DNA of 63,389 nucleotides, filler included, from Octopus bimaculoides (GCF_001194135.2; 6 parts of 5 records of this genome joined end to end with filler, not necessarily neighbours in it), one strand, 5' to 3'; positions 22,401-56,639 are shown, counted from the whole stretch's first letter. Notes: generated by a model not told the origin, from the letters alone. Program-made: numbers and translations.

Positions 22401-24924
22401 CTTTATTATTGATGTTAAGTCGCTTCAATTTATGCGATTGATACGATCGAAAAACGTGTCGGACTATTATTCTAACTGGAAATAAACAGAAAGTTTGAAT
22501 GTTCAGATTCTTCATTCTCCTCATTTTAATATTGTTCTTTACACTTTAAGTAGACGAGACATAAACTGGAACATCAGATGAGAGCTGAAAGTAGATCACC
22601 AAAAAATGCACCATTAGAAGGAACCAACCTTGGCCTTTTACTCAGAGAGATTCGATATCTACCTGGATATCATATCCATCCTACTTACATATAAGTACTT
22701 ATAAAAATGCAATAGGATCAAATGTCCTTCGCCAGTTTTCCCCGGGTTCAGTGAAATATGTATTCAAGCTGGAAAAATCTCCCTAGGTGACACGTTGGTC
22801 GGTCACATGATTACTCTCTTTTGCCTGCTGAGCTGACTGGAGCAAAGTAAAATGAGATGTTTCGTTCAAGAACGCACACATCAAACCCAACCCACTAACC
22901 GAACCTATAATCCTACGACTGTAACTGTAACACACTAGCCACTAAAGCCACGCCCATACACACATACGCGCGTGTACACTCTCACACACACACACACACA
23001 CATACACATACACACACACCCATACACCCACACACACACACACATACACAAAACAAACGTCCACGCGTAACCCGTCAACCAAATTAACTCACATTTTATT
23101 GACTAAACCGAGGCTATAGTGGAAGTCACGTGCTCCACTAGTCGTTAAGAAGATTGATAAATCGAACGCCACATGGTTCCAAAGCAAAATTGTTAACCAC
23201 ACTGCTGCGGAAGACGTCTAATCTTGTCAAAAATGTATAAGATATCATCCTTACACTGAATATTGGAAGAATTCGTGAGGACGCCAAAAGGAATGAGGTT
23301 TATTTGTTGTTAGTCTCTGTATTTTCCTGAAATTTTAGGCGGGAGAAGATCATATGAAATGTGGAGCGTTCTGATCTCGCACTGAGTCTGAAAGTATATT
23401 CTCGGAGATTTCTGATAATCTGTTGTCAACGAGAATTTGGGGGAAAATTCTACCAACATCGTCAGCAATAATTTTCCTTTCCAGTTTTAAATGTCTTTGT
23501 CATATCAGTTCATATTGTGCACGCGCACACACGCACACGCACACACACACATGCATGCACACACACACATACACACACACACAAACACACATACGAACGC
23601 GCACGCACTATCGCATATTTCTAAAATTTACAAGAAGCCATGAGAAAATATGATAGTTATGCAATAGTTATAGAACGTCTGTGTTTGTATTAAGTAAATT
23701 TTATAAATCAGTAAGTGAGTAATAGACTAAATTCGTATGTTCTGTACAGTTTATAATTTAATAGCTAAACCAATTAATTCTATGTCCCGGCTTCTTTCTG
23801 ATCGCTTGTACACACATTTCATTCACTGTTTTATATCAACTATTAAAATAATAGTGAGATATAATTATATATTTCCATAGAATTTGTGAGTATTATTTTC
23901 TAGAATATGGCGAATGTATTATTTATTAATTGAATCAGCAAAACAAGTATTTTCATATTTTTATTCTGATAACTTTTACATAATTTAAACTAAATTTGTA
24001 ATGTTATTAATAATAGTAATTTTTCTTAACAGGTGCAAGTCACAGATTTGCTAGGTGAGCGATGTCAAGCTAATAACCTTCTCCAACACATGTCTGGTAA
24101 TATTCTACTTTATCCACGAGAGGTGAAACATAAATTCGATCCCACAGAATTTAAAAACAAAAAAATTATTGGCAAACATTGTAATAGCATCTACTATCCA
24201 CCCCATAGTCATACTATTAATGATTTCAAGCACATAAACCACAGTACAAATGCCAAACGTTTTAGCTCATTGCCGAAGACATTTACGGATGAGAAAAGAC
24301 ATATATAAACTTTCCATAGGTAGTAATACACCGGTGAATCGCACATTTTAAGCATAAATTGCTCATACTGTCCTGTATTATTATATTTGTTACTCCATTC
24401 GTTAAAGGCTAATTTGAGTGTTAATACCTTGATTGAATTGCTCTATAGAATATTTACTCTGATATGCTCCATTTTATTCTAATTGTGTGCGTCTTTACTA
24501 AACATCACACAAATTCGCACTCAAATTAACAATTGTGTCAACGAAGACAGAAGCAAAAATCTTCCGCCAATACAACTGCAGTTTCACGTGTATTCTCTGT
24601 TTCCTGTTTTCATATAACAGCAATCGGTATATAATTTCATGCACGCTATGTATTTTCTTTCAGTTATGTTTAAAACTTGATTCTGTACTTTTGAAAAAAT
24701 AATCAGTTCAAACCACAAGGTACTAAAAATTATCAACTTTGAAAGAAGTTTGCTTTTCGTTTCACTAGAATACATTAACTGGTTTTAATAAAAAGAAATC
24801 TAAATATCTACATGCCGTACTTTGGCTATTTTATTGATGTGTCTTTTATGAAATTGGACCTATTTCTACTTACATCCTCACACAAAAATATTTTGTCATA
24901 TGTACGACACTTAATATCATTTTG

Positions 24925-26967: not shown

Positions 26968-28239
26968 TAGTGTAGTTATTATTTTTATTATTACGATTAT
27001 TATCTTTTTGTCGTTATCTTTTCATAATATTCATCTCAGTCATTTATATATTTGTGCTCTCAAGGCATAATTTCGACATTCAGGCTATAAACAGCTACAG
27101 AAATAAACATAATAAAACTACAAAGGCACGTGTGTGACGTGTGTATTACATGTCTTCACATAATCTGTAGCCGATCTTGCTATCTAGCTAGACAGAATGC
27201 ATTGAACAATCGTTTTGATAGCTGCTGTTTACCAACTACATCTTACAGCTATCACAATTATCGGCCAACCAGCATGCCAGGCAACGGTCTTGCTTATACA
27301 AACGAAGTCCGCAGAAAGCAATAATCAGTAATCTCTAAATTACAACAAAACATTCTAATGATCATTTTTATCTTCTCTTGCAAACGGTCACTGACCGATT
27401 ACATAGACCCGACCCAAGAGATGGAAGATCATGAAGAGAAACACGTGTTTATATACATACTCGTCTTATAAATGTCGCAATGTTTATAATATCACGATCT
27501 TTCAAATACACACACAAATATTTTCTGAAGCAAACATAGATGTCTTCGAAAGTGTATCAAACACGGATACGCACACTCCTGTACGGACCAACGCATACAT
27601 ACATAACCGCAAATATAGACCCACTCATGCATATAGAAACACTTACACGTACACAAGATATCTGTGTGCGTATATAGAGCAATATTTATATATTTATGTA
27701 TGAAGAGAAGATTAACAGACTTAATGTAATATACAACCATTATCATGTCTAATGAATAATGAATGCCTAATCTCATACAAGCGTCCGACATATTCCCTCA
27801 CCAATACTTTTGAATACGGAGACCTGCACAGACACATGCACGCGTGTGTGTATATATATGTATGTGTGTGTATATACATACATATATATATATATATATA
27901 NNNNNNNNNNNNNNNNNNNNNNNNNNNNNNNNNNNNNNNNNNNNTTAATTAATTAANNNNNNNNNNNNNNNNNNNNNNNNNNNNNNNNNNNNNNNNNNNN
28001 GCGTGCGTGCGTGTGTCTTTGTGTTTGTCCCAACCACCGCTTGATAACAAGTGATGGTCTGTTTACGTCACCGTAACTCAGCGGTTCGGCAAAAGAATAA
28101 ATACCATGCTTTAAAAAAAAAAAAGTAACAGGGTCGTTTTGTTCCAATGAAAGTCGGTATTCCAGCATGGCCGCAGCCTAATAACTAACATGGAATGTTA
28201 TAGATATCGTATTTTACTTATTTATTTAGATCAATGATC

Positions 28240-37917: not shown

Positions 37918-38017
37918 NNNNNNNNNNNNNNNNNNNNNNNNNNNNNNNNNNNNNNNNNNNNTTAATTAATTAANNNNNNNNNNNNNNNNNNNNNNNNNNN
38001 NNNNNNNNNNNNNNNNN
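37918..38017. other. Assembly join: 100-bp N block with central TTAATTAATTAA six-frame-stop linker
   Basis: The same 12-mer sits inside 100-bp N blocks at 27946, 37962, 50129, 58517 and 62186. It is artificial, so order and distance across these joins are unknown. Confidence 0.92.
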
Positions 38018-38345
38018 ATGCATCACTACACATGTTGATGCCCAGATCTCTCACTGTTTGTGGTTCTGGGATTGCAGTACCTCCAGGCCCTGTGTATGCC
38101 AGTTGGGAGGTACTTGTGGTCTTGTAGCGCAGTACTTGAAATTTTTTTGCATTGAACTGCATATTATTTTGCTCTGCCCACTCATATATTGCATTTAGGT
38201 CATTCTGCAGGCTTACAATATCATCAGGATTCTTTATTGCCGGAGATATCTTTGTGTCATCAGCATAGCTAGTGACAGTGGCTCTCCGAGTGACCGTGGG
38301 CATGTCCAGAAGGGCCACTATGAACAGTAGTGGCCCCAGAACAGT
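38018..38345 (-). mobile_element. CR1/Jockey-group LINE reverse-transcriptase fragment
   Basis: TVLGPLLFI..YADDTKI..LQNDLNAIYEWAEQNNMQFNAKKFQVL..VRDLGI; truncated at an assembly join. Confidence 0.88.
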
Positions 38346-38864
38346 GATATACTAGCAGACACTCGCTTCTAGTATAGTGGTTGAGAAGCATTATTGTATA
38401 CATTGATTTTATCGTGTGTCTTCTAGTGTGCGTGTTTGTACATGTTATATTTAACTGATATGTTATATGTATGTGTGTATGTACGTATGTATGCCTGCAT
38501 GAATGTATGTTTCTCCGTATGTATGTAATTATGTATGTATGTATGTATGTATGTATGTGCACTGCAGCTCTCATTTTGCGCACTGTCTAAAAACGGGTTT
38601 CTAAGTATTTTGTGCAAATGAGTTCTTGCGTGTAAGTCTGTGAAGTTGTTTATTGATGAAAAACCAGTAAACCTGTATATAATAATATCATACCTCATCA
38701 AGGCAACCAATCAGGTTTTAATAATGATAGAACTGGTAACAGCATAAACTATACCGTTAACGGTTACTACCTACATTCAATCGCTTTATCTCCAGAATAG
38801 AACACAGTCTTTACTTGTCACAACCAAACCTGTTTGATTTTTCTTCGAACTAAGTGCATCGAAA

Positions 38865-38898
38865 ATGGACGGAATTTTGCCTCGATACATATTTGTTG
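38865..38898 (+). CDS. Predicted coding exon 1 of a secreted cysteine-rich protein (MDGILPRYIFV, start of signal peptide)
   Basis: ATG in good context (gaaaATGG). Donor GTTG|gtaaag at 38899 is phase 1 and joins in frame to the exon at 42840. An upstream acceptor-like site ctttatctccag| (38795) suggests the exon may begin at 38796 with 5'UTR. Confidence 0.6.
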
Positions 38899-39282
38899 GT
38901 AAAGTGATATTCCTTTTTTTTTTTCCTTTTATATTACACATATAAATAATTAATTAATGTAGTCATTTATTTGTTTATTCATTATAATCTGTTTTTATCG
39001 CAAAGCCTTAGAAGTTTTGCGATTATAGAACAAAACGTTAAGAATACAAATAGGTTTTGGGAGTGCGAACGGTTTGAAAATACATCTTATACATCAGAAG
39101 AGAAATTTTTCAACGGAGTATGCGTTGTCAAACGTATACTGTTAGAAGCAGCATAGACGACATGTCAAAAGGTTTTTGAAAAAGAATTTATTACAGATAT
39201 ATGAAATATTCCATTATTTTATCACCATATTTTCCTTTGTCCCTCCCCCATAACTTCCAATAGAGCGTTTGATGTATACAAT

Positions 39283-39283
<1 letters not shown>

Positions 39284-39360
<77 letters not shown>

Positions 39361-39361
39361 G
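39284..39361. repeat. (GATA)n microsatellite
   Basis: Read directly. Confidence 0.97.
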
Positions 39362-39679
39362 CAAACAGAAAGAAAGCAAGAGATTTTGATAAAGGGGTAA
39401 AATGAATTATTCTCCTACAGCTACCATCTTTGTTGGCAAATTCGCTTTGATAAATAGATTTAATGATCCATGTTAGCTATTTACTAAGTATTGTAGATAG
39501 GATTTGATCCCCAAATTTTTGCTAATCATTCGTATGTTAATGTGAGTGATAAATCTCATGCCATTTGTAATATCGTACATACCTATGGTGTATCGCCGCG
39601 CTCCATCTGTGACCAATTCGTTTTAATTTTATCGATCATTGTACATTCAAGACTACATTATCCAGTAAGTTCTACCCAT

Positions 39680-39972
39680 TTTTAAAGGCGCTTGAATGTG
39701 ATTTGATGGACATTTAACTGATATTTACTGCAGATACCAAGGAACACTTAGAGGAGTTGTCATTGAATTCGTTATGTCGTTATTACGAGGAGGAGAAGTA
39801 AGCTTAAGGAATCATTCAGATGATTACTTAAGTACATGAACTTATACAATCAGGGTTAATTCATTCAAATTTCAACAGAATGACCTCAGACGTACATAAA
39901 CCACCACAGACTTCTACACCTGCTAGAAATATCAGCTAAATCCCCTTAATTACAATATGTACTGTCTTAAAG
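39680..39972. mobile_element. Decayed TIR (MITE-like) repeat
   Basis: 39697-39733 TGTGATTTGATGGACATTTAACTGATATTTACTGCAG aligns with the revcomp of 39920-39955. Confidence 0.6.
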
Positions 39973-39984
39973 AGGGAAGAAATG

Positions 39985-40016
<32 letters not shown>

Positions 40017-40311
40017 GCCGCCTATGAGGAGGCGTATAAATCGATTAAAGTTGTTCATCATTTTTTTTCAGTCTGCGAAGAAATGGCTAAAAATTTGCCT
40101 TGTTTATAATTATACCATATATATATTAACCTGAAGAAAAGAACGAAAAGTCACAGAGAGAATGTCATTGGGCATTTGTCTATCTAAGAGATTGTTCTAA
40201 GGTTAAACAACTTCCAAAAGAATATGGGAGATGAGGTATTAAAGTTCTTCATAGTTCAAGCACCATCGTACAAGGAAGGGCTGCTGATGAATTGTGGGGA
40301 ATTATTTAAAT

Positions 40312-40827
40312 TGGGGGTGGAGAAATCCTTGCCGGCGGGCGCAGTTTACGCCCGCGAGCCCATTTTATTACGCCCGCAGGATAATATACTCGTATGAACA
40401 AAATATAGTAAATTTTTCAATTATTAAATTTATACGATACTAGTATGCCTATTTGCGACATAGGTCGCGTTTCTACTACAACTTAAAACGGTTAAAATGG
40501 CAATTGCCATTTGAATGGAAATTTTCTTTTCACTATAAAACAAATACTGCTAAGTTTGTACTACCCTCTTGAGACCAAACTACACTCTAACTGAAAGATA
40601 TAGAATACCTCATAAGTAATATAAACATGCTAAATTCTGTGGCGGCGTGAATGAAGATGTTACGTGATAATTTAATGTGTTAAACTTATCTTTATTGATG
40701 TATATCGAATTATACATAGATATATACAAGATTTCCACAGATATAAGGGTTAGAACTTGTGATCCGCCTGCGGGCCTTTTTCTTTGGAAATTTTTGCCCG
40801 CCGCACTATAAAGTTTCCCTACCCCTG
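40312..40827. mobile_element. hAT (Charlie-like) MITE, 516 bp
   Basis: Perfect 8-bp TSD ATTTAAAT (40304-40311, 40828-40835). Termini (T/C)(G/A)GGGGT.G...CCCCTG with subterminal GCCCGC repeats. Confidence 0.9.
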
Positions 40828-42839
40828 ATTTAAATTACAGAAGTTCATAGTTAGTTGATGCATAAAATATCAATGTTTAATAAATAACATTCTAAAAAAT
40901 AAATATAAAAGACATTTTTACTTGAAAATAAAATGGGTTAATAATTAGAGAAGCAATTTTAATTATTCTACTCATTTACTGATAGAAATCATGGTCGTTT
41001 TAGATATATTTTTTCTTTTCATGTCTGTGAAAAATATTCCCACAGTATTTTCTGTGCTTTCGTTTATTCACAATGATTTATCAAGTCTTTTGAAATGTGT
41101 TTTCTTTTTCTTCTTTTACATTTTTTTTCGTTGATTTTCGTTTAGTTCAAAGGTTTTATTGTTTCACGTTATTTACACGTTTTATAAAAAGCATCTAAAT
41201 GACTGATACAGTGGAAGGTTTTGTCTAAATAACTAACATTACCGTGCAGTGAGTGTGTGAGAAATATTTAATTGTTAAAGAAGCTCTTTGTTTTTCTCAA
41301 CTCTAAAAATAAGCATGTCAGAAAAATTTCTCAACGATTCGTAGTCATAATTCTGTACAAAAAAACTGAATAAGTTAGAACCAGTTTTCGTGGTAAAATA
41401 ATTGCATCTTATTTATCATCGACAACTCTAAAATGGATGTGGACTGGAATATTTTTTAGAGCATCTATGAAGATCGTTCATTTTATTATGTGTTTCTGTC
41501 AGGCTGCGATTTTTGTTCATCATTCATGATTTGATTTTATAAGACTTTATTAGTCAAGTATTGGTGTCGATTTTATTCACAATCCACTCTCTCAGGCATG
41601 TTGAGTCTTGTAACCATGTTAGAAATCAATATTATGTTGTACGAGTCGGTGTGTTAGGTAATCCTTTCTATACTAGTTCTCCTCTCTGAATTAGTCATCA
41701 AAACGCTCCTCCCTTCTGTATTAATCATCCAGACACTATTACTCTCACGATAGCTAATTTGATATTCCTTTGTATTGCTGTTATTGATCACTTTACAAAG
41801 CAAATTGTTGTCCAGTCACACATCCACCGTCATGCAACACACCTGTGATTATCCTTTTACTGTGATATAGGGCTGTATTATCTATTTCCTTTCTGTTGTT
41901 TAATTAAACAGGATAGTTCCATTGTTACTTCTAGTAGGTCTAGCGATCAAGTTAGGCGTTTCCATTAAGCTGTTTCAATTCTGTAATTTGAGGCTTTCAT
42001 AGATTTCGTATCAGTTTAATACTACCAGCCAATTTAATCAATCTTTGACATTTCTCGGAATGAGAATAGCGACAGCTAACATCACTTTCTCCATTCTTAT
42101 AGGTACATGTCATATAGAACTTCTCGATTCCTTTATTAGACATTAAGCTACATCCAGCAATGGCTTTCCGGTTCGTGGTTTCTGAAGTTTTGAAAAGTAT
42201 CAAGCTACCCTTATTCACCACAGCTCTTAATTTCGTTAAGGGCTGGTAGTACCTGTCAAGATCCCCATTCTATGTCAAGTAGTAGAAGTTATTTCTGTGC
42301 AATACAACAATGAGAACATAGACTAAGGTACACAACCCTGGCCCTTAGACATGTGTGCTACAGCTCTAAATGTCTCTGGACATGCCCGAAGTCACCTGCA
42401 CCAGACCTACACACCAGACCTACACATCCCCAGATAACAGTGAAATATCCTATCTTTAAAATTGCTTGTTTGTTCTAGTAAATAAATGTATGGAGGTGGG
42501 TAAATGTTTGTGGGTACAATTCCTGATTACAGATTGTTTCTGCCTTTCAGTTCAACAATTTTTGTTATTGATCAACTTGGTGGTCTAGTAGAAGATATTT
42601 ATTCAACGTGGTGCTGCGCAATGGAATCCACCCTAAACCCAAGTTATTGCAAATATTGCCACACATATACTGTATAATATTGCAATGTTGTGTAAATGTT
42701 AAGACTTTGAAAACGCAATAAAAAAATTGTTGGCCAAGCATATACACATATAAGCTCACTCAAAAAAGACACACGTTACACAATTAAACGCATTTATAAC
42801 TAATTATTTAAATAACTCCTTATCCATTCTATATTTCAG

Positions 42840-42987
42840 TTACTATTTTTCTGTGGATACCATTGAGCAATGGTTGTATGAATACAGCTGTCGGTGAATT
42901 TATGAATTGTACAATGAAATTAAATATCCCAATGGCAGCATCACCAGATAAATCCTCGTTAAAACAGCAAATGGATGTGATATGCAA
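42840..42987 (+). CDS. Predicted coding exon 2 (VTIFLWIPLSNG-CMNTAVGEFMNCTMKLNIPMAASPDKSSLKQQMDVICK)
   Basis: Strong acceptor ctccttatccattctatatttcag| and donor TGCAA|gtaatt. 148 nt, open from phase 1 to phase 2. Completes a hydrophobic signal peptide ending S-N-G and is followed by three Cys. Confidence 0.72.
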
Positions 42988-43154
42988 GTAATTAGACATT
43001 TTATTAAATACTTATTATTCAATTAATTGTTCACTGCCTTATAATTCAGTCAGAATAAGTTACACAATGAAATAAGATTGATATGAGGATAACTAGAATT
43101 GTAAAACGTCTGACATTTGTTTTCTTCTTAATAATAAATATGCAAAACAATATA

Positions 43155-43325
43155 TTTGTTTCAAATTTTGGCCAGCAATTTCCGGGAAGGAGAGAAGTTG
43201 TTTACATCGATCCTCGTGTTCGACTGGTACTTATTTTATCGACCTGGAGAGGACGAAAGGCAAATTCTACTCCAGCGAAATTTGAACTAAGAAGGATAAG
43301 TCGGAAGAAATACTGCTAAACATTC
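43155..43325 (-). mobile_element. Family-A SINE (decayed)
   Basis: Revcomp of the central domain (GGTACTTATTTTATCGAC..GAAAGGCAAA) and B box. Confidence 0.75.
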
Positions 43326-43570
43326 AATTTAATTTATCAAAATTAAATTAAATGTCACAATATAAATATATAACTATATAATTTAGAGAATAAAATCACA
43401 ATTATTTAATTCATCCATGAAACTATTTTAATATTTATTACTTTGTACGTTTTTTTGATTTTTATTATAGATTTATATATATATATATATATATATTGGT
43501 ATATAAGTATATATATTGGTATAGAAGCGTTAGCACGCCGGGCGAAATGCTTAGCGGTGTTTCGTCTGTC

Positions 43571-46500
43571 TCCTTTGTTGCTTGCGCATCGCACATGTGT
43601 TCGTGGTGAAAGTTGCTGTTTCTTGGTGTTGATATTGCTAATGGCTGCTGTTTCTAATAGCTTCTGTTTCTTGTTGAATTGTTGAATTTCGTAACTATTG
43701 GAGTTTTCGTTTGAAAGCACTAGGTGCTTGAGGAGGGCACGCGTTGCTCATTTCTCCGTTGGGGGTAGGAATGTCGTCAAACGGGGGAGGGAGGTTACCG
43801 TTGGAGCGGAAGTATTTGTTTCCCCTGTTGAAGCGAGGAATTGCATGTTGTCTGGCGGGGAGCCAGCTGCGAGCGGGGAAATGGTGGATTCCCCCGAAGA
43901 TGGAATTTTTTATTCCCCCGTTGCAGGAAGAAGTAGCAGGGTGTATAAGTTATTTGGGAGGAATTCCCGAGTTTGCCAAGGAACGGGGGCATTGTGTCCA
44001 AAAGAGTGATTGATGCACCTANNNNNNNNNNGAGGATGGAGAGGTACCTGAGGCCGGTCTGGAGCAACGTGGTTTGTCTGACGTGAAGCAGGAGGTTTGA
44101 TGCGATGGAGGTGGGGTTTACCAGCAGAGAAGTTGCAGGGGGACATTCGGTGGAAGCGCAGAAGGCGGGCGACGTGGCGCTCATGCCCACTTATATGGGG
44201 ATGGGAGCGTCCAGAATTAGAATCACAAGGATCCCACCGGAGGTGAATCCTATGTGGTTGGTGGCGGCAGTCCTAATCAAACAGGAAGAGAAAATTACTC
44301 TCCTCCAGGCTGCCGCTACCGGGGGCGCTGACTGAACTGGTCAAACGGTTGGTCTCCTTATCCAGGCTGACCCTAAAGTAGTTGAAACAATTCCCGGGAC
44401 AATTGAGATGGGGGTGGAGACTCTCATGGTGTTTGTTGAGGGCCAAAAACCCCGATGTTTTTTGTGCGTCCAATTAGGCCACATTCGAAGGAACTGCAAG
44501 GAAAATGAGGAAGGGGAGAAGGAAGAAAAGGAGGAAGAAGAGGAAAAAGATGAGAAGAAAACAACAAACAAAAAGGAAAATACAATCAGCAATTCAACCG
44601 AGAGAGGCGACTACTACAGAACAACGACCAAAAAAGACTGCCAGAAAAGAAAAAGAGGAAAAAGGCATAATAGCCGTATACAGTAAAGATACTGAGCTAA
44701 TGAGAGACATTCAATTGATTAAGACTGCAAAAAAAAATAAATAACCTTTCTGAGAAATTTAACAACTATGACGTGTATGAAGTCTCAAATAAGACTCATA
44801 AAATTTTACCAAACAAATACCGTAAGACAGTATCATCTATGAAATTGGACTTTAATAAGTCTATATTTCATGGAATACCAGCCCCGATCCCTCGAGAAAA
44901 GAAAAAGGTGGACACCCCTCTCCACTCCACCTGATAATTCTGTGTCGGTAATGAGACGGGATTTTAACAAATCTATTTCCCAAGACCTGCCATCTCCGAC
45001 CTTGTATCAAGAAAAAGTGGAGGGTCCTTCTCCACCGGACAGCCCTGATTAACAGGTAAATCATGTCTATTCACATTGGTTGTATAAATGTTCGTGGCCT
45101 GATGCCTAGCTGGAAGCAAGTACGCTTCCTAAATGACATCAGGTCAAGAAAATTGGATGTGATTGTTGCAACGGAAACCCGAGTAAAGGGGCGAAGAGAT
45201 CTGTCCCCCCCCCCCGCCTCCTGAATGGCTATGAGAAATACGTTTCTCCGAGTCGGGCGGGAGGGGGTGTTGTCCTACTAAAATGAAACCGGGTAGCCGA
45301 GAAAAAGTTGGGTTTTTTTTCTGATCCAGAAGGCAGGCTGGTCGTTCTCGACATGACATTCAGTTGTGGCAAGATAATCAGGCTAGTCGCTATTTATGCA
45401 CCCAACATTATGGGCCCACAAAGTGAATATTTTCGTAACCTGGGCAAGTTCATGGCCACGTCACATTCGCTAGTATTGTTAGGAGACTTTAACACAATAT
45501 GTGAGGCACACACAAATTGTGTTAGCTCGAACATGAACAGAAAATGTAACCCAGGCTTACGGGATCTGCTAAGTCATTTTCAGCTAGCAGATCCATATAG
45601 GTTGGAACACCCGAACACTCTACAGTGGACGTGGTTAAATAGTGACGTGTCTTCCAGAACATATCTAGATAGGATTTTAATTAGAGAAACAGATAAGTCC
45701 ATAGCTAAGCGTCCACAGTTTTTTCTAGTCATCTATAGTGACCACAAGATGGTTACCTGTAAACTGACAATAGATAAGTTACATAGTCAGTGATCTGGCT
45801 ACTGGAAACTTAATACACCCCTTTTGGCGATTGAGGAATACAGAAAGCGGATCAAGATATTAATACATAGGGCATTGACAGGTACCATCATTAATAACAA
45901 ATGGTGGTACACCCTAAAAAGAGCCATCAAATATGAGTCTATTAGGTTTAGCGTAAGTTTAGCTAAGGGACGTAGAATAGGAGATGGTTTAGTTAAGGAA
46001 CTAGAAGAAGCCTGAAGGACTGGTAATGCGAACCAAGTGAAGGTAAAAAGACTGGAGTTAAACCAGTATCTTGAAGCCCAACACATGGGAAGTATTGCCA
46101 GAGCTAAGTTACGTGCGATGGGAAGTGAAGGAATCAAGGCCGCTGGATGGGCCCGAGTGGGGGAAGCTCGGCAAGGAAATAGTTCCACGATACGGTCTTT
46201 GACGAATCATAATGGCGTCTTGGTAAACGAACCCGAGAAAATGTGTGAGGCCCTTCGAGAATACTTCGCCCAATTGTTGGGGGGTTACGGCGGTCCTGGT
46301 GGTGAGAGAGCCCTCGAGAACATTCTTGTCGGGTTGCCGTGTCTCCCGGGGTCGGATGCGGAGTCTTGCGAAGGGCCAATCACGCCTGTGGGGGTGATAG
46401 AGGCTTTAGCCGACTGTAAAGCGGGTAAGTCGCCGGGACTTGATGGTATTCCGTATGAGCTGTATAAATGTATGCCAGACTTGTTCGGGCATCAACTGCG

Positions 46501-47915
46501 TGACGTCTACGCGAACTGGCAACAGAATGGGTTTATCCCCAGATTTGTGCGCCGGTGAGTAGTGACATTGGTCAGAAAGGACCCGGACAAGGGGGACGTT
46601 ATAGAGAATTTCAGGCCCATCACTCTGTTAAACGCAGAAGTGAAGATTTTGGCCAAGGTCTTAGTGAAAAGGTTGGCGCGTGTCGCAAATGGTATAGTCG
46701 GGGAGGCACAGACACATGCCATCCCAGGCAGAACCATTCAGGATACCCGCCATCTTATTCGCTATACCATAGAGAGGGTTGGTAATAAATCCGGCAAATG
46801 TGGGGCATTGGTATATTTGGACCAGTCTAAAGCTTTTGATAGGGTTGACCATCGATACCTGGCGACTGTGCTTGCGCGGTTCAGCCTGGGCCTTGGCTTC
46901 CTCAGGTGGTTTATCGCTTTGTACCACAACATCGACTCGATAGTTCGGGTGAACGGTTTCTTTTCGAAGCCGTTCTGCATCAGACGCTCGGTTCGTCAAG
47001 GATGTCCGCTCTCACCACTTTTTTATGTGGTGGCTCTGGAGCCCCTACTACGATGGTTGAGTGGCATCTCGAGAGAACCAGGTCTAGAGAAATTTGTTAC
47101 GGCTTACGCGGATGATATCACTATCAGCGTAACCTCAGTAGCACGCCTACGTGAAGTGGGTAAGACTATTGAGGCTTACGAGGAGGTAGTAGGAGCTATT
47201 CCGGCGCTCGGGCAACGCCAGCGGTGGGGGTTCCACACGGATTTTATATAGTGGGTTGGTAGAGTTTGAATGTGACGATTGCCTAAGGGTGACTCTAGGT
47301 CTCGGGTTTATTCAACTGGACAGCCTGTTTCACCGTACATTCGGGTTGAGAACGTTGGACAACTTCCAAAAGTCCTTAACCTGGCAATGCTACAGAGGTG
47401 CCTTGCCCGTTTGGGATAAGCTCGCAAAACATGGTAAGCGTCTGTCGCCGACCTGTCCAAGATGCGAGGGAGACAGGGAAACCGTCCCTCACGCTATTGT
47501 TCAGTGTCCGGAGATATCTGAAATGTGTGCTTATGCTGAACACCTTGTTGTCCGGCGAAGGAAGACTACAGCTGTCAACTGAATCAATTATAAAAATTGA
47601 CCCACCGGGAGTTTTAACAAACGAAGGTAAGAATTGTTTTCTCACGGTTGTAGCAATAGCGAAAGAGACAGTATGGAAGACTAGGATAAAAGGAATTAAG
47701 ACAGGCAACTTTATCTCTGGCCNNNNNNNNNNNNNNNNNNNNNNNNNNNNNNNNNNNNNNNNNNNNNNNNNNNNNNNNNNNNNNNNNNNNNNNNNNNNNN
47801 NNNNNNNNNNNNNNNNNNNNNNNNNNNNNNNNNNNNNNNNNNNNNNNNNNNNNNNNNNNNNNNNNNNNNNNNNNNNNNNNNNNNNNNNNNNNNNNNNNTG
47901 TCCCTGTATTGTTAA
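43571..47915 (+). mobile_element. Near full-length decayed Tx1/L1-clade non-LTR retrotransposon (ORF1 + ORF2) in intron 2 of the predicted gene
   Basis: ORF1 remnant with RRM-like RIRITRIPPEV and CCHC knuckle CFLCVQLGHIRRNC (~44455-44500). ORF2 from ATG 45063: APE motifs (CINVRGL, ATET, YAPN, LGDFN, LDRIL, SDH), YWKLN, RT motifs (GKSPGLDG, FRPITLLN, LDQSKAFDRVDH, RQGCPLSP, YADD) and C-terminal CPRC..ETVPH...CP. Several stops and frameshifts, plus an internal deletion near 47198. The 3' end runs into a gap. Confidence 0.93.
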
Positions 47916-48009
47916 TTTCATTCGATTTTTTTTAAAGATTTTTTATTTAATTTATAAAAGTCGTACTTTATGTAAAATCATACCGATTTACTGATCCCAT
48001 CAGTTGTTC

Positions 48010-48240
48010 TGTCCATTTCTATGTTTAGCCCCCAGTGGGCAATGAAGAAATTGGTATTTCGTCTGCCGTTACGTTCTGAGTTCAAATTCCACTGAGGTCG
48101 ACTTTGCCTTTCATCCTTTCGGGATCGATAAATTAAGTACCAGTTACGCACTTGGGTCGACGTAATCGACTTAATCCCTTTGTCTGTCCTTGTTTGTCCC
48201 CTCTATGTTTAGCCCCCTGTGGGCAATAAAGAAATAAGAA
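48010..48240 (+). mobile_element. Family-A SINE (partial tandem)
   Basis: GAGTTCAAATTCC..GTCGACTTTGCCTTTCATCC..; tail ATGTTTAGCCCC..GGGCAAT duplicated at both ends. Confidence 0.88.
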
Positions 48241-48540
48241 ATGTAGAAAAAGAAGTTAGAAATGTATTGGGATTCGTTTAGATCTTTTATTTAAAATTTT
48301 TTTAGACATATCCTGTTTCACAGATTGCTTTGATTTTCAAAAGTTGAGATGGTTATGCTGTTAACTGTCATGCTTCTGATTGGAGTTTAAAAATTGTCTT
48401 GTTTTTATTAAGAGAACCTGGTTCAAATTAGTATATGTTTGGGGTTCGTTTTGATTGGCCGTAGATCACGAGAATAGGTTTAGAAATTTTAGTAAATTTC
48501 CCGCTACATCCGTTATTTAATGACATCTGACAATATGCTG

Positions 48541-48922
48541 TGGCGCGTAAGTTAAAACTGTTACGGTTGAGTGAACATGTCCAGTACCTGCCTAGATATA
48601 TGCAAACAATAACTATTCAACCACTGCGCTCCATAGAAACAACTCTTGACCACTTTACCCCTTGACAGATTAAATTTAGAGAGCTCAGATTGGAAATTGC
48701 ACAACACATGTTCACTCAGCCGTGTCAGACTTAATTTTCGGCGCAAAAAATATAACCACATGATATTAACGCATGAACGTAGCAAAGAACCTACCAGCAA
48801 TTACTGAGGCTAATCACGTGATCTTCCACTACATTTGACCGTTAAAACTCAGACAGCTTTCATTGTTTGGGATTGGCACTAGATGTGCTCACTCAACCAT
48901 GACAACTTTAACTTACGGCACC
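48541..48922. mobile_element. MITE-like element with ~46-bp imperfect TIRs and a third internal TIR copy
   Basis: Left GGCGCGTAAGTTAAAACTGTTACGGTTGAGTGAACATGTCCAGT; reverse copies at 48706-48744 and 48877-48922. Confidence 0.7.
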
Positions 48923-49644
48923 AAAGATATTATCCCCTGACATTAAAGAACGCACGTAGCGAGGAAACTATAAGCATTTCTAAATTTAATCATATGATCA
49001 AAATCAGTCGATCAAAACGCATCGAAAAGAGATACTAATTTGAGCAATGTTCTCTATAAAAACAAGTCAATTTTTAAACCCCAGTCAGAAGCAATACAGT
49101 TGCAGCATACCTCCACGTCTTTCTATCTCAACCTTTGAAAATCAGAAATCTGTGAAATCGGTTGAGTTTTAAAAATTTACACACAAAAACCATAGTAATG
49201 TTCATTAGGATAACTGATGATAGTAACGCAAATATATTTTATGTTCGACTGTGAATGTCTTACATCTTAGTCTTGTTATTCTGGGTTGGCCTTCATTCTT
49301 GTAATGTGGAAAGCGTTTTATGGGGATAGCTTACTTTCGTAGTGTTTGTTTTTCTCCATAAGTCATCTAATTAAGCTTGAACAAGCCTGAGACATTGGAG
49401 TCTAGTTTACGGGAAGTTCAGTGGCATATAGTTTACTGTTTCTTTATTGGTAGGGTCAAATAAGGTATTCCATCCGGTGAGAGATAAATATCATTTGACA
49501 TACACGGAATTTAAGAAAACTATTGGTAGCTCATTTTAAAATTCTGTGTATATTAAATCACACACACACACATATACATATACATACATGTGTGCATGTG
49601 TGTGTGTGTGTACATCTATCTTCTAAATTTATTTCTTTTTCTAG

Positions 49645-49790
49645 GATGGAATCAGAAAAGAAAAAGAAATTCCATTCTTGCTTTGACAACTTTAAAAAAT
49701 GTGAACAAATTAAGACAATATCAGAAAGTGTGGGGATAAATATCTTGAAGACGATGGAGTCCACCGAGAAGCTGTGTAAACACGAACAAG
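49645..49790 (+). CDS. Predicted coding exon 3 (MESEKKKKFHSCFDNFKKCEQIKTISESVGINILKTMESTEKLCKHEQ)
   Basis: Acceptor tttatttctttttctag| and donor ACAAG|gtaaga. 146 nt. Only the phase-2 frame is open (the other two hit stops), which matches the phase left by exon 2. Ends in phase 1; the next exon was not identified. Confidence 0.72.
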
Positions 49791-50594
49791 GTAAGATTTA
49801 GTTTTCTTATTAAAGCCTTTTTCTTGTCATTGTTGGTGAAATAATATGGACACAACCATCTGAGTTTATGTTACCCTCACACTCCATCAGCTCTGATCGA
49901 CCATTGCTCCAAATTGCTCCCCAGAGCAGCACAGAACAGTCACCGTGTTTCATTGTTCGCTACAATCTTTTCATGTCAAATTCTTGATCACAGTCTCCAG
50001 AACCACGCTCGACCACTGTCAGAAAATACAGCAAATCTGAACTCATCAGAAAATATGACAGTGTCCCAAAATGCTAGTGTCCTCNNNNNNNNNNNNNNNN
50101 NNNNNNNNNNNNNNNNNNNNNNNNNNNNTTAATTAATTAANNNNNNNNNNNNNNNNNNNNNNNNNNNNNNNNNNNNNNNNNNNNTGTGTGTGTATGCGTG
50201 TGTATGTATATATGAAACAATGCGTGGAAGATGCACAATATAAGAGAGCACACCTTTGATGCACATCTCATGAAGCGCCACACTAATGTCTATAACAGGA
50301 AACGTTACGTAATTTTTTTGCGTAAACTGACGTTGCAAGCAGAGTTAGTACAGAAACAATTGCAATAAGTAATTAAAGATAGATATATTAAAGGACGTCT
50401 TTGTCTTATTATCTGAATTATATTTTACTCTTCGCCACACCCACACAACGGTTTTACCGTCGTGAAGCCAGGATTTTCTACGCTTGAAGAATTTCGATAA
50501 TAGTGTGGAATCCAGCACTGTTGATAGCTCAGAACTTGCATTGCGTGCTTCTCTGAAAATACCCTACCTTTATACCCTACAGGATCCAGAATGA

Positions 50595-50702: not shown

Positions 50703-53139
50703 AAATTACGAAAAGTAGCGTGAACAATAATTTTACAATTGTTTCGTCGGCATTCATACTCAACAATGTTGCTTTATTATTATATTATACACGCAAATAT
50801 ACATATAAGATGTCTCAGTATTTTGATACACACAATTGTCGACTAACCAGAATCATATAATGAAACATACATACATATATATATGTATATACTCAAACCA
50901 CCAGTAAACTGGTTTGAGTTGAGTATCACCAGTACAGTGAAATGCAACGAAGTTTCTCTAGACGCCAGGTAGTGGTGGTATTGGCACCAACAATAAATTA
51001 AGATTAATGCCATATAGGCCATTTTGAGATTTGAACCCAAAACTGAAAGTGTCGGAAAAATTAACGCAAATCATTTTGTGTGACATCCTCAATGTTTCTC
51101 CAAATTACCACCCTCGATTAGCACATCCTATTATCGATTTACAGAATGAGGATTGGTAAAACTGATATCGGCAGAATTTGAAGTCAGAGTGCATAAAAAC
51201 TGAAGAAACTTATTGAGGTATTTCACTCAGTACTCTCTATCGACTACGCCAAATCACTGCCTAATATAGCACCTAATAATGAAAATTTCATGCATCATTA
51301 TATCAATTATGATAGCATGCGCTTTACTATAAACTGTTGAAGCAGTAGTCATCTGTGGTTAAATACACTACCCAGAGTTCATGTACAACAAACCTATATC
51401 TCACTAATCAATATTATGTAGTTACTGTTACGTTTTGTTATGCTAACGAGAGTTATCGTGACAGAAATTTATTTACAGTTCTCACCATATCACTAGAGGT
51501 CAAATTCTATCTTGCACCCTATTGTATTATATACTTAATTAAATATTACTTGAATTCCGGATTTATCATCTCCGCCCTTACAGAAGAATTAGTCATTTAT
51601 ATAATTCATGTCCATTTTTATCACTGAGGTTATTATTTTTATTAATTAAAATCTATTGTTTCATAACACCAAGAATGGTAGCAGCCATTTCAAGAGAGAG
51701 AATCATTACGTGTATTTGTTGATATATTTCAGTTGTCAGAAACAGCCTTTTTGGTGGTTCACACATTCAGATTTTTCTCTTTTGTGTTAAAAGTGCGAAG
51801 TTCACGTTTGTTCTTCATTGTTTCTTATATATATATTATTTTTAGTTTTGTATCAGTCATTGGACTACGGACACACTGGAGCACCGCCTTGAAGTGTCTT
51901 AATGAAACAAACCGACATCAATACTTATTATTTTCTTTAGGCCTGGTAATTATTCTATTGGCCACTTTTGCGAACCACTAATTATAGGAACATAAAGAAA
52001 GCAACTCCACTTGTGAGGCGGCGGGGAGTATAAACACAACGCTATTATTGATTTAATCATTGATACTGTTTTCCACATTATCCGTGTAGTTATTATTATT
52101 ACTAGTCATATAATATTTATTTTGGTTTTATTATTTGTGTTTACTAGGTTTCAACCAATGAATTCTTTAGTTCGCTTAAAACCATATACTGCCATAATTT
52201 CGGCTAGATTCCTAGTCGCCGAAAAGGAAAACCTAATCGCATGCCGCTTCAAAATGTGATTGCACCTGCTCGATGGCGGAAAGTGTCTACCTAAAGCAGC
52301 GAAAGACTTTACAGGTATATGTGTGGCTGTCTGAGTTCCAAAGAGTGCATTATACCATAATATAAGTCTAGAGCTAGCTTTTTTTTTTTCTTATGGGGTG
52401 ATCACCGTTTTTATTAACAGCCTCATTTTGATATTTACTGTATGTTTTTTTAGTTATTACTACGTTTTTTATGGGTGTTCACTTAAACTTATATCACTAT
52501 TAATTATACGACTGTTCTTACTATTGTGATGTTCGGCACGAAAGACTGAAAATCGCATTATCGTTGTCCTGATTTTTTGCCTTATGTTCACGTTTTGATT
52601 ACCTATATCAATTTGATCCATAATATTTACCTTATTCGTCTGTTCCTTAATTTCATTATTAAGGATAGATGTTAACAGGGACTATTTAATACTTGAATCT
52701 TCAGTTCACTTCATACACCCAGTTTGATAAACCCTTGAGAAAAGCTGCAAGGTAACGTCTAGCTTGGTTGGATATGAACTTCAAATTAACCAAGTAAATT
52801 CATATAAACGCTACATCAAATGACACAAGAGCACCTATCCAACAGAAACATGTGTCGGTTTGGAATTTAATGAGAAAAATACTGTAATAAATAATTTTTG
52901 AAGATGTATAATTCTCCATTCTTCTTTATAATGTCATGATTATTATCCTTTGTACACTGTATGAAATCCAATGAAGTGAAGTCAGGGTTTATCAACTGTG
53001 TGAAGTTCCGTTTAATTGTTTGTCTTAAAATAATTCTGTGTTCTGTATCATTCGATGTGATAAGCCAGATTTGGATTCTATCCGAGTGCTAATAAATAAA
53101 TTACGTGCTCGGATTGCTCATCGTTATTCCTTTACTACA

Positions 53140-55342: not shown

Positions 55343-56639
55343 CGTGTCTGAGTGTGTTCCTATTTGTATCTGCATATGTCCGATGCGTGTCTGTATTCCA
55401 AAGAGTACTGTGTCATTTATAAAAAGGGATACAAGACATTCCCCAGCCTTTCTTTCCACCTGCCTGCTCATTAGCCACTACGATGTTCGACTCGCAATGG
55501 TTCCACTGGAATGGCCTGAGATAGCTAAATAAAGATTATGCATGCTTAGACAAGCAACAAGCCACTAGCGCCTTGCAAAGTCAACTTGTTATATCAATTT
55601 GGCTTCCTGTAGTTACTTGAATACAAACACCGTCATTCTAGTAGCATGTTAATGACATACATACATATATACACACATACAAGCATACATACATACATAC
55701 ATACATACATACATACAAATATATACATATATATATATATATATATATTTGCATCTGATGTAGTAAGTCAAAGATTGGATTTCAGTTATTTGGAAGTTGC
55801 TTAACAGCAATTGTTCATGCTTTGAAGTTATTGATATGTCCCCAAGAGCTTATTAGAGAGTTGAATATCTGTACATTTTACTCAGCGTTTACATAAGATA
55901 TAGAAGATGTGACGGAAAACTGGTATTTACATTACACCTAATATAATATCCGATTATGCGACGCAAGCTCTTGGTAATTTTCTTCTTGTTTTATTATCTA
56001 CCAGAGTTAATTTCTACTATTATCCTTTTCTTTATGCCACTGCATTATTTCTGCTCTTTTATATCAGTAGTTTACAGAGATTGACAAGATCATTCCATCA
56101 GTATTCTTTCATCGTATGAGCAAGTTTAATTTCTAATTACAGCAGCTTGAATATTTATCTTGATTACTTGCTTTCCTTGTTGTATTGTATCGTCTTTTGA
56201 CATCATACCTCATATGTAACTAAAATTGTGATAGTGGTTATCGAATTAATGTTGGCACGTATTTTATAATATTTATTTGAGGTTTTCTGATTCACGGAAT
56301 GTTCTGCATAAAATTGATGCATAACATTCTATGAATCAGAAAAACTCTAATAAATTCATATATTAGAAATCCTGATTATGATAGTACAACCAAATTTTCT
56401 AAAATTTAGATTTATTTCATTTCACCTGACATGCTGCTTTGTATAATAAGATATAGATTTACTCAATAATTGTTTACATACTTGTTTCTCTCACAGCAAG
56501 ACTTTCCAATATCAACTTTGTTCTCAATAATATTTGATAGTATCATAAATCATCTCCATGTTAGTCGATCCATTTGAGAGTTCTGAATAAAGCTCAACTG
56601 TTTCATTTTCTTTGTCTACTCCCACTCGGCTCTTGAATT

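What the first reader, a model, noticed from the sequence alone, without database searches (positions are those of the whole stretch)
38865..49790. Hidden three-exon gene for a secreted six-cysteine protein, missed by the ORF track
Seen: three exons with canonical GT-AG sites and matching phases (1, then 2) splice into an uninterrupted 109-aa frame: MDGILPRYIFVVTIFLWIPLSNG|CMNTAVGEFMNCTMKLNIPMAASPDKSSLKQQMDVICKMESEKKKKFHSCFDNFKKCEQIKTISESVGINILKTMESTEKLCKHEQ. The spacing is C-x10-C-x24-C-x12-C-x6-C-x24-C after a hydrophobic leader ending S-N-G. All three exons lie between the artificial joins at 37918 and 50085, so exon 4 may be lost or misplaced. Inference: a secreted, disulfide-bonded, mostly helical domain, loosely like the DUF19-type cysteine pattern of invertebrate secreted proteins. 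I do not recognise it, so it may be a lineage-restricted secreted protein.
Basis: partly seen in the sequence, partly recalled or inferred. Interest (0 to 1): 0.75.

Follow-up and report, generated by a model that had tools for sequence, protein, structure and literature searches.

The report
Annotated octopus surface-protein gene, first three exons
The three exons are real, but they are the first three of five exons of an already annotated, uncharacterised Octopus bimaculoides gene (LOC106869697) for a fast-evolving, cysteine-rich helical protein that most likely sits on the cell surface by a lipid (GPI) anchor.

Summary
Exons 38865-38898, 42840-42987 and 49645-49790 splice (GT-AG, phases 1 and 2) into the stated 109 aa.

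It is not a hidden gene. The peptide is 100% identical to residues 1-109 of XP_014771024.1 / A0A0L8HMU2, "uncharacterized protein LOC106869697" of Octopus bimaculoides (233 aa). The piece is 100% identical to chromosome CM046613.1 of GCA_001194135.2.

The gene has five coding exons (34/148/146/172/202 nt). Exons 4 and 5 lie 2.9 and 6.3 kb beyond exon 3, past the piece's edge. Both N gaps lie in intron 2, in O. bimaculoides-specific DNA that carries a dead LINE, so no coding sequence is affected.

No Pfam family reaches threshold (DUF19 at best E 0.15). No solved structure resembles the model.

The gene sits in a three-gene tandem array shared with O. sinensis and O. vulgaris. Frame, splice sites, cysteines and targeting signals are conserved, yet exons diverge about twice as fast as flanking introns (dN/dS 1.2-2.0). 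Exon 2 shows gene conversion with a paralog.

The gene is known; its function is not.

The parts
38865..38898 (+). Coding exon 1 of LOC106869697 (ATG + 34 nt; MDGILPRYIFV + 1 base; first half of the signal peptide). Ends in phase 1.
   Evidence: Exact spliced mapping of P0010 on L001. Same 34-nt exon and donor in O. sinensis, O. vulgaris and the paralogs.
38899..42839 (+). Intron 1 (3941 nt), GT..AG. Contains a perfect (ATAG)19.5 microsatellite at 39283-39360.
42840..42987 (+). Coding exon 2 (148 nt). Encodes the rest of the signal peptide (VTIFLWIPLSNG), the predicted cleavage site G23|C24, and Cys 24, 35 and 60. The exon and its flanks group by species with exon 2 of the neighbouring 3-unit gene, which indicates gene conversion.
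   Evidence: Quartet test 10:0. Internal repeat units of the paralogs begin at the residue aligned to this exon's first codon.
42988..49644 (+). Intron 2 (6657 nt as assembled). Its middle part, 43329-48236, has no counterpart in O. sinensis or O. vulgaris. That part holds both N gaps (44022-44031, 47723-47898) and a dead LINE.
44408..47582 (+). Degenerate non-LTR retrotransposon inside intron 2, not part of the gene product. It has a zinc knuckle (44408-44686), endonuclease (45308-45793), reverse transcriptase (46562-47251) and zf-RVT (47256-47582). ORF2 carries three in-frame stops and a frameshift.
   Evidence: Pfam hits and translation.
49645..49790 (+). Coding exon 3 (146 nt; Cys 73, 80, 105). 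It has the best acceptor/donor pair in the piece and ends in phase 1.
   Evidence: It groups with its ortholog 14:0.
49791..50084 (+). First 294 nt of intron 3, cut by the piece's edge. Exon 4 (172 nt) and exon 5 (202 nt, including the stop) would stand at window-equivalent positions 52543-52714 and 55987-56188. On L001 they are 23679-23850 and 27123-27324.

Best explanation
The finding is the 5' part (coding exons 1-3 of 5) of Octopus bimaculoides gene LOC106869697 (XP_014771024.1, 233 aa).

Shown:
- The exon structure.
- Identity to the annotated protein.
- Synteny and conserved exon sizes and splice sites in O. sinensis and O. vulgaris.
- Ten invariant cysteines across 12 domain units.
- An all-alpha predicted fold with no Pfam family at threshold and no similar solved structure.
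- A three-gene tandem array.
- Amino-acid-changing divergence about twice the intronic divergence, and gene conversion at exon 2.

Inferred from sequence rules:
- The precursor enters the ER through a 23-residue signal peptide (n-region with R7, h-region YIFVVTIFLWIPL, S-N-G | C).
- It folds into a ~186-residue helical domain held by five disulfides, with N-glycan sequons at N34 and N128.
- Its C-terminal peptide is exchanged for a GPI anchor. That peptide has small residues S210-S211-G212, the spacer IKSLPNIS, and a 14-residue hydrophobic tail that ends the protein.
- The mature domain is therefore displayed on the outer face of the plasma membrane.

Inferred from the mode of evolution: a conserved leader, cysteine scaffold and anchor signal surround a hypervariable surface. 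The domain most likely acts as a binding or recognition module whose partner changes quickly (gamete, microbe, or chemical or contact cue). Which partner cannot be told from sequence.
For: Gene identity:
- 100% identity over 100% of the 109 aa to P0010.
- The piece is 100% identical to CM046613.1.
- A unique exact spliced mapping gives exons of 34/148/146/172/202 nt.

Conservation:
- The O. sinensis ortholog has exons of 34/148/146/163/202 nt, and O. vulgaris shares the first four sizes. Both share the same splice-site sequences and the same upstream neighbour gene.
- With 139 random substitutions, P(no stop) = 0.002 and P(all 10 Cys kept) = 0.003.
- Intron flanks carry 26 indels per 3 kb. The exons carry one, a 9-nt in-frame indel.

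Architecture:
- Cys and motif conservation (alignments A1 and A2).
- Model pLDDT is 73.5 overall and mostly 76-91 over residues 24-209, with nine helices. Residues 1-21 and 210-233 are below 50, as expected for cleaved targeting peptides.
- The strongest hydrophobic windows lie at 218-233 and 8-19.
- Internal units of the 3-unit paralog splice out the tail, and only terminal units keep it intact.

Evolution (versus O. sinensis unless stated):
- Exons are 79.9% identical and 300-nt flanks 89.6%.
- Mature domain: dN 0.293, dS 0.22. Signal peptide: dN 0.059.
- Nonsynonymous differences versus intron mismatches: OR 2.75, p 3e-14. For exons 3-5 alone: 0.218 vs 0.115, OR 2.1, p 3e-7.
- O. sinensis vs O. 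vulgaris: 10 nonsynonymous and 0 synonymous differences. Neighbour gene: omega 1.54.
Against: - No transcript or protein evidence could be examined here. The RefSeq and UniProt entries are predictions.
- Signal-peptide and GPI calls rest on inspection against textbook rules. No SignalP or GPI predictor was available.
- dN/dS above 1 is not significant against the few synonymous sites (Fisher p about 0.06). dS (0.17-0.22) itself exceeds intron divergence (p about 0.1).
- Gene conversion is demonstrated for exon 2. Undetected exchange with unsampled paralogs could therefore inflate exon divergence elsewhere.
- Nei-Gojobori counts were not corrected for transition bias or AT-rich codon usage.
- The alignment behind the structure model holds only 12 closely related sequences.
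- The function has no direct evidence.
Confidence: 0.85

Rival explanations
1. One reading: a freely secreted, soluble six-cysteine protein.
For: The exon-5 internal donor TCATCTG|GTATAAAA is conserved in this gene. In O. vulgaris an annotated isoform (P0007) uses it and lacks the hydrophobic tail, so tail-less soluble isoforms are conceivable. GPI proteins can also be shed.
Against: The annotated product has ten cysteines in one domain, and a C-terminal hydrophobic tail conserved in O. bimaculoides, O. sinensis, O. vulgaris and the paralog P0004. The GPI-signal region is more conserved than the mature domain at the nucleotide level: exon 5 is 84% identical against 75-79% for exons 2-4.
Confidence: 0.12
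2. The C-terminal hydrophobic stretch is a transmembrane anchor (a type I protein with no cytoplasmic tail), not a GPI signal.
For: No GPI predictor was run. A hydrophobic C-terminus alone is ambiguous.
Against: The hydrophobic run is only about 14 residues and ends the protein, with no charged stop-transfer residues. It is preceded by small residues (S-S-G) and a polar spacer of 8 residues. This is the classical omega-site, spacer and tail layout (established knowledge of GPI signals; sequence).
Confidence: 0.1
3. The family is a divergent branch of the DUF19 / T20D4.11-like secreted proteins known from nematodes. This is compatible with the main explanation and concerns ancestry only.
For: UniRef names four paralogous entries 'DUF19 domain-containing protein'. 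Two of 12 units give weak PF01579 matches, best E 0.15; one spans unit residues 16-128 and profile positions 37-147 of 157. There are also weak hits to two other nematode extracellular Cys-rich families: SCVP E 0.0099 and CPG4 E 2.8. C. elegans DUF19 proteins are mostly secreted and 140-220 aa long (PMC3534327).
Against: Nothing reaches Pfam's gathering score (10 bits against 23.2). The window's own protein P0010 gives no Pfam match at E<=10. By my recollection of the Pfam description, not checked here, DUF19 has 12 conserved cysteines against 10 here.
Confidence: 0.3
4. The excess exon divergence is produced by gene conversion or exchange among paralogs, not by positive selection on amino-acid changes.
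For: Exon 2 and its flanks group by species, not by orthology (10:0, 8:0 and 4:1 informative sites). dS in the exons also exceeds intron divergence.
Against: Exons 3, 4 and 5 and their flanks group by orthology (14:0, 12:3, 7:1; flanks 18-92 to 0-1). Their closest relative is the ortholog, not any sampled paralog. They still show nonsynonymous divergence twice the intronic value (p 3e-7). The very close pair O. sinensis / O. vulgaris differs by 10 replacements and no silent change.
Confidence: 0.2
5. A chance chain of open frames, or a decaying pseudogene evolving neutrally (omega about 1).
For: Omega is near 1 to 2 and not significantly above 1 on synonymous sites alone. A determined reader can find GT-AG chains in 12 kb of AT-rich DNA.
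Against: Exact identity to an annotated 233-aa protein. Intact frames, identical exon sizes and splice sites in three species. Ten of ten cysteines kept in 12 units. P<0.003 each for no stop and for all Cys kept under random substitution. The only exon indel is in frame, against 26 indels per 3 kb in the flanks. The nonsynonymous rate exceeds, rather than equals, the intron rate.
Confidence: 0.02

Closest known systems
RefSeq LOC106869697 / XP_014771024.1 (UniProt A0A0L8HMU2), Octopus bimaculoides 'uncharacterized protein'
   Same: Identical: the 109 aa are residues 1-109 of this entry, and the DNA is 100% identical to CM046613.1 of GCA_001194135.2.
   Different: Nothing differs. The window piece merely lacks exons 4 and 5.
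Positional orthologs: O. sinensis LOC115218594 (XP_029644350.1) and O. vulgaris CAI9732001.1 / CAI9732000.1
   Same: Same neighbour gene upstream, same strand, exon sizes 34/148/146/163/202 nt (O. sinensis; the O. vulgaris model shares the first four), same splice-site sequences, all ten Cys, and the same leader and GPI-type tail.
   Different: Only 59.6% amino-acid identity although flanking introns are ~90% identical. Exon 4 is 9 nt shorter. Their intron 2 lacks the LINE.
Paralogs in the same array: LOC106869698 (222 aa) upstream and LOC106869700 (three fused units, 431/510-aa isoforms) downstream
   Same: Same domain, same cysteines, same exon design, same GPI-type tail.
   Different: 32-55% identity. 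LOC106869700 strings three exon sets together through an internal donor in each exon-5 copy. Its internal units retain a relic of the signal-peptide half and decayed tails.
DUF19 / T20D4.11-like domain (Pfam PF01579), a large family of nematode secreted proteins
   Same: Secreted, cysteine-rich, of similar size (140-220 aa in C. elegans, PMC3534327). Weak sub-threshold profile matches, and UniRef naming of paralogs.
   Different: Scores are far below the Pfam cut-off and the window's own protein gives no match at E<=10. Ten rather than (from memory) twelve cysteines. A GPI-type tail and multi-unit genes.
Conotoxin-type and reproductive-protein-type 'accelerated' gene families (works like, not a member)
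   Same: Conserved signal peptide and cysteine framework around a hypervariable mature region. Exons diverge faster than introns. Tandem gene array. (Comparison from general knowledge; the pattern here comes.)
   Different: A large (~186 aa) helical, membrane-tethered domain, not a small soluble peptide. No evidence of venom or gamete expression.
GPI-anchored cysteine-rich surface proteins: Ly6/uPAR and GFR-alpha/GAS1
   Same: Signal peptide plus a disulfide-rich ectodomain plus a GPI signal. GFR-alpha domains are also all-helical with ten cysteines (from memory).
   Different: No Pfam match to UPAR_LY6 or GDNF/GAS1 domains at E<=10. Ly6 is a beta-sheet three-finger fold. No Foldseek match to any PDB chain.

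Membership tests
Gene LOC106869697 of Octopus bimaculoides | Protein sequence identical to XP_014771024.1 over the part encoded here | tested here: met
   100% identity, 100% coverage of the 109 aa. Sequence, accession.
Gene LOC106869697 of Octopus bimaculoides | Genomic DNA identical to the reference chromosome, and exons at the annotated CDS positions | tested here: met
Megablast gives 100% over 9705 + 2186 nt.
Gene LOC106869697 of Octopus bimaculoides | Transcribed and spliced as modelled | not testable with these tools
   No RNA-seq data were available. Indirect support only: conserved exon sizes and splice sites in three species.
DUF19 / T20D4.11-like (PF01579) | Score at or above Pfam's gathering threshold (23.2 bits) | tested here: not met
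   The window peptide and P0010 give no match at E<=10. Best among 12 units is E 0.15. One unit scores 10 bits over profile positions 37-147 of 157.
DUF19 / T20D4.11-like (PF01579) | Conserved cysteine framework (12 Cys in ~130-150 aa, as I recall the Pfam description) | tested here: inconclusive
   Ten invariant Cys over ~180 aa here. The register against the DUF19 cysteines could not be checked because no DUF19 alignment was at hand.
DUF19 / T20D4.11-like (PF01579) | Secreted protein with a signal peptide, 140-220 aa | tested here: met
   Leader MDGILPRYIFVVTIFLWIPLSNG, and a mature length of ~186 aa. The C. elegans family description is in PMC3534327.
GPI-anchored proteins | N-terminal ER signal peptide | tested here: met
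   By inspection: basic n-region, 13-residue h-region, and small residues at -3 and -1 (S-N-G|C). The region has a second-ranked hydrophobicity peak and pLDDT below 50. No predictor was run.
GPI-anchored proteins | C-terminal signal: small omega, omega+1 and omega+2 residues, a 6-10-residue spacer, and a 12-20-residue hydrophobic tail ending the protein | tested here: met
   ...KID-S-S-G-IKSLPNIS-LISLLFLILLFVIS(stop). This is the top hydrophobicity peak, at 218-233. It is conserved in orthologs and in terminal units only. By inspection, no predictor was run.
GPI-anchored proteins | Release by PI-PLC / chemical detection of the anchor | not testable with these tools
   Requires experiment.
Genes under diversifying (positive) selection | Replacement rate above the neutral rate | tested here: met
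   Against intron mismatches: OR 2.75, p 3e-14 for the mature domain, and OR 2.1, p 3e-7 for exons 3-5. Against synonymous sites, omega is 1.2-2.0 but p is about 0.06.
Genes under diversifying (positive) selection | Not explained by paralog exchange | tested here: inconclusive
   Exon 2 is converted (10:0). Exons 3-5 are orthologous (14:0, 12:3, 7:1). Only one paralogous unit per species was used in the quartets.

The most novel reading that the evidence does not exclude
LOC106869697 and its two neighbours form an Octopus-restricted family with a previously unseen all-helical, five-disulfide fold, displayed on the cell surface by a GPI anchor. The family diversifies under positive selection and grows by gene conversion and exon-set fusion. 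It would then be a lineage-specific recognition system (gamete, microbial or chemotactile) of octopuses that nobody has described.
Probability: 0.3. Interest if true: 0.55.

Novelty: already known. Interest (0 to 1): 0.3.

Why it matters
As a gene discovery it does not matter, because the gene has stood in UniProt and RefSeq as a predicted, uncharacterised protein.

What may matter is the character of the family, which I found described in no paper:
- It was detected only in Octopus.
- No Pfam family reaches threshold and no similar solved structure was found.
- It appears to be GPI-anchored.
- It is arranged in a conserved three-gene array.
- It changes its amino acids about twice as fast as its introns change, while keeping cysteines, leader and anchor signal fixed.

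Such a pattern is typical of proteins engaged in recognition or conflict. That makes the array a reasonable candidate for cephalopod-specific biology worth an expression and localisation study.

The case also shows that the first-stage reader can reconstruct split eukaryotic genes correctly from raw sequence.

Tried and rejected
- Pfam scan of the 109 aa and word-index homology search: nothing. The latter was a false negative, because a 100% identical protein is in that database and appeared only with a profile query. The third word-index search, with the conserved C-terminal half, returned one known member and missed the rest, so that tool's negatives carry little weight.
- Single-sequence AlphaFold model of the 109 aa (pLDDT 64.5) and its Foldseek search: no significant match. 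The top rows (nematode FAR proteins, E 1.7) are noise.
- Full-length model against PDB, and a family profile against PDB sequences: only designed coiled coils or E above 1.
- Rfam on the piece: nothing.
- P0005 (1284 aa, E 3e-7) is a low-complexity repeat protein and was rejected as spurious.
- Literature searches for the LOC, XP and UniProt identifiers and for DUF19 with octopus: no relevant paper.
- The look-up of encoding contigs for P0002 failed because only the longest isoform is indexed. P0007 and P0008 were used instead.
- Independent test of continuity across the N gaps: not possible, because the only O. bimaculoides assembly reachable carries the same gaps.

Full report
**Observation**

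The proposed exons were read directly and spliced by script.
- Exon 1 is 38865-38898 (ATG, 34 nt, donor GTAAAG).
- Exon 2 is 42840-42987 (acceptor tatatttcAG, 148 nt, donor GTAATT).
- Exon 3 is 49645-49790 (acceptor ctttttctAG, 146 nt, donor GTAAGA).

Together they give 328 nt, that is 109 codons plus one base. The frame ends in phase 1 at a strong donor, so the gene must continue.

I scored splice sites with a rough consensus matrix of my own. Exon 3 is the best candidate internal exon on either strand: its acceptor ranks 3rd of 727 AG and its donor 4th of 738 GT. Outside the LINE-bearing part of intron 2, exons 2 and 3 are the only + strand candidates at those thresholds. Exon 2's and exon 1's sites are only moderate, so the sequence alone would leave some doubt.

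**Gaps**

The two N runs (44022-44031 and 47723-47898) both lie in intron 2. The same runs are present in the source assembly, so their continuity cannot be tested independently. They are irrelevant to the frame, for two reasons.
- The gap-free orthologous introns of O. sinensis (4461 nt) and O. vulgaris (4407 nt) align only to 42988-43328 and 48237-49644. Window 43329-48236 is therefore O. bimaculoides-specific DNA.
- The homologous proteins align across the exon 2/3 junction without any indel.

That specific DNA carries a non-LTR retrotransposon on the + strand: zinc knuckle, endonuclease, reverse transcriptase and zf-RVT. Its ORF2 has three in-frame stops and a frameshift.

**What it is**

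Pfam and the word-index protein search found nothing for the 109 aa. The exhaustive phmmer search found four Octopus protein clusters. They align from residue 1 to 108/109, that is across both splice junctions (E 1.3e-47, 1.0e-35, 1.1e-33 and 5.9e-9). They come from O. bimaculoides, O. vulgaris and O. sinensis.

A profile of these hits then retrieved P0010, 233 aa, 100% identical over 100% of the query. It is 'uncharacterized protein LOC106869697 [Octopus bimaculoides]', XP_014771024.1, UniProt A0A0L8HMU2. Its locus lies on chromosome CM046613.1 of GCA_001194135.2 and is 100% identical to the piece.

Exact spliced mapping gives five coding exons of 34, 148, 146, 172 and 202 nt. Exons 4 and 5 lie 2.9 kb and 6.3 kb downstream of exon 3, beyond the piece's edge at 50084. 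So the gene is real and correctly reconstructed, but it is neither hidden nor new, and nothing is lost or misplaced.

**The protein**

Residues 110-233 add four more invariant cysteines, giving 24, 35, 60, 73, 80, 105, 117, 166, 181 and 201. They also add the best conserved motif of the family (YCP-LL/IL-K-GIE...KC-EKF...D-MSD-CRSIN). The protein ends ...KIDSSGIKSLPNISLISLLFLILLFVIS.

That ending has small residues (S-S-G), an 8-residue polar spacer and a 14-residue hydrophobic tail terminating the protein. This is the textbook layout of a GPI-attachment signal. The N-terminus has a basic n-region, a 13-residue hydrophobic core and S-N-G before Cys24. Both calls are by inspection, because no predictor was available.

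AlphaFold2 with a 12-sequence family alignment gives pLDDT 73.5 and pTM 0.70. It shows nine helices over residues 24-209 (mostly pLDDT 76-91), with low confidence exactly for residues 1-21 and 210-233.

The comparisons gave the following.
- Foldseek against the PDB finds nothing: best E 1.7, TM below 0.25.
- A family profile against PDB sequences finds only designed coiled coils.
- Pfam gives no hit at threshold. DUF19 (PF01579) matches 2 of 12 units at E 0.15 or worse. One match covers unit residues 16-128 and profile positions 37-147 of 157 at 10 bits, against a cut-off of 23.2. SCVP and CPG4 give single weak hits.
- UniRef nevertheless calls four paralogous entries 'DUF19 domain-containing'.

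**Genomic context**

On CM046613.1 the order is LOC106869698 (222 aa), then LOC106869697 (this gene), then LOC106869700 (three fused units). All are on one strand within about 106 kb. In O. sinensis and O. vulgaris the ortholog has the same upstream neighbour.

The three-unit gene repeats the exon set 148/146/172/131 nt. Each internal unit begins with a relic of the exon-2-encoded half of the signal peptide (VTMSPQIPSSNG). Each exon-5 copy is spliced at an internal donor, TCATCTG|GTATAAAA, just before the GPI tail. In internal units the tail has decayed. The same donor is intact in this gene's exon 5.

**Evolution**

Against O. sinensis:
- No frameshift or stop occurs.
- Exon sizes are 34/148/146/163/202 nt.
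- Splice-site sequences are nearly identical.
- All ten cysteines are kept.

Under 139 random substitutions the chance of no stop is 0.002 and of keeping all ten Cys is 0.003. Intron flanks show 26 indels per 3 kb (21 of them not multiples of three), whereas the exons show one 9-nt in-frame indel. The gene is therefore under selection for its frame and scaffold.

Yet amino-acid identity is only 59.6%. Exons are 79.9% identical while their 300-nt flanks are 89.6% identical. Nei-Gojobori estimates are:

| Region | dN | dS | omega |
|---|---|---|---|
| Whole protein | 0.252 | 0.167 | 1.5 |
| Residues 1-109 | 0.276 | 0.137 | 2.0 |
| Mature domain | 0.293 | 0.22 | 1.33 |
| Signal peptide | 0.059 | 0 | not defined |

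Against the few synonymous sites the excess is marginal (p about 0.06). Against intron mismatches it is strong: OR 2.75, p 3e-14.

Two further comparisons point the same way. O. sinensis and O. vulgaris differ by ten replacements and no silent change in 207 codons. The neighbouring three-unit gene gives omega 1.54.

A four-sequence test separates two processes.
- Exon 2 and its flanks group by species: 10:0, 8:0 and 4:1 informative sites. This indicates gene conversion between this gene and unit 1 of LOC106869700.
- Exons 3, 4 and 5 group by orthology: 14:0, 12:3 and 7:1. They still show a replacement divergence of 0.218 against an intronic 0.115 (OR 2.1, p 3e-7).

I read this as accelerated, probably diversifying, evolution of the exposed residues on a fixed scaffold, with conversion superimposed at the 5' end. 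Codon site models on more species are needed to prove it.

**Mechanism, with its grades**

- Shown: gene structure, identity, conservation, array, fold class, mode of evolution.
- Inferred from sequence rules: ER entry, cleavage after G23, five disulfides, N-glycans at N34 and N128, GPI anchoring near S210-G212, and display on the cell surface.
- Inferred from the evolutionary pattern: a recognition or binding role against a rapidly changing partner. The partner is unknown.

No paper in the searchable library mentions any of the identifiers.

**Verdict**

As a finding it is already known, being an annotated predicted gene, so the interest score is low (0.3). The residual interest lies in an undescribed, Octopus-restricted, fast-evolving family of putatively GPI-anchored proteins with no recognisable fold.

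Noticed in passing
window 44408-47582 (+), inside intron 2: Degenerate LINE with zf-CCHC, endonuclease, reverse transcriptase and zf-RVT. ORF2 has three in-frame stops and a frameshift. The whole block 43329-48236, with both N gaps, is absent from the orthologous introns of O. sinensis and O. vulgaris, so it is a lineage-specific insertion.
   Followed up: yes
window 38018-38318 (-): Fragment of another reverse transcriptase (RVT_1, E 1.9e-5) on the opposite strand, about 550 nt upstream of the start codon and cut by the piece's edge.
   Followed up: partly
window 48285-48588 and 48875-49188: Pair of ~300-nt inverted repeats (71-86% complementary over the seeds) in intron 2, about 0.5 kb upstream of exon 3. 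The same inverted arrangement is seen in O. sinensis and O. vulgaris (reverse-strand HSPs). It may be a foldback element or a conserved intronic structure.
   Followed up: partly
window 48054-48241; L001 23968-24154: A ~190-nt dispersed repeat in intron 2 recurs at 94% identity in intron 4 of the same gene. It also occurs, inverted and at 72% identity, near the 5' end of the O. sinensis and O. vulgaris intron 2.
   Followed up: no
window 38466-38558, 39283-39360, 49559-49611: Microsatellites: an imperfect (TATG)23 about 300 nt upstream of the ATG; a perfect (ATAG)19.5 in intron 1; and a (CA)n/(TG)n tract ending about 30 nt before the exon-3 acceptor.
   Followed up: no
L005 10001-39745 (LOC106869700) and L006 (O. 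vulgaris CAI9731999): The neighbouring gene consists of three complete domain units made by repeating the exon set 148/146/172/131 nt. Internal units start with a relic of the signal-peptide half encoded by exon 2, and their exon-5 copies keep decayed GPI tails after an internal donor. This looks like a fusion of once separate tandem genes. Annotated isoforms have two or three units.
   Followed up: partly
L001 27253|27254 (exon 5 of the window's gene, outside the piece): The internal donor TCATCTG|GTATAAAA used by the multi-unit genes is intact in this single-unit gene. The O. vulgaris ortholog has an annotated isoform (P0007) that uses it and loses the GPI tail. So tail-less or read-through isoforms may exist.
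   Followed up: partly
window 42840-42987 with ±250 nt; L005 21928-22075: Exon 2 and its flanks are ~90% identical even between paralogs and group by species (10:0). This indicates concerted evolution (gene conversion) confined to the 5' part of the genes.
   Followed up: yes
L003 vs L004 (O. sinensis vs O. vulgaris orthologs): Ten amino-acid replacements and not one synonymous difference in 207 codons between two very closely related species.
   Followed up: partly
tools: The word-index protein search returned nothing for a query whose 100% identical full-length protein is in its database, and later missed most family members. Its negative results should not be read as absence.
   Followed up: yes
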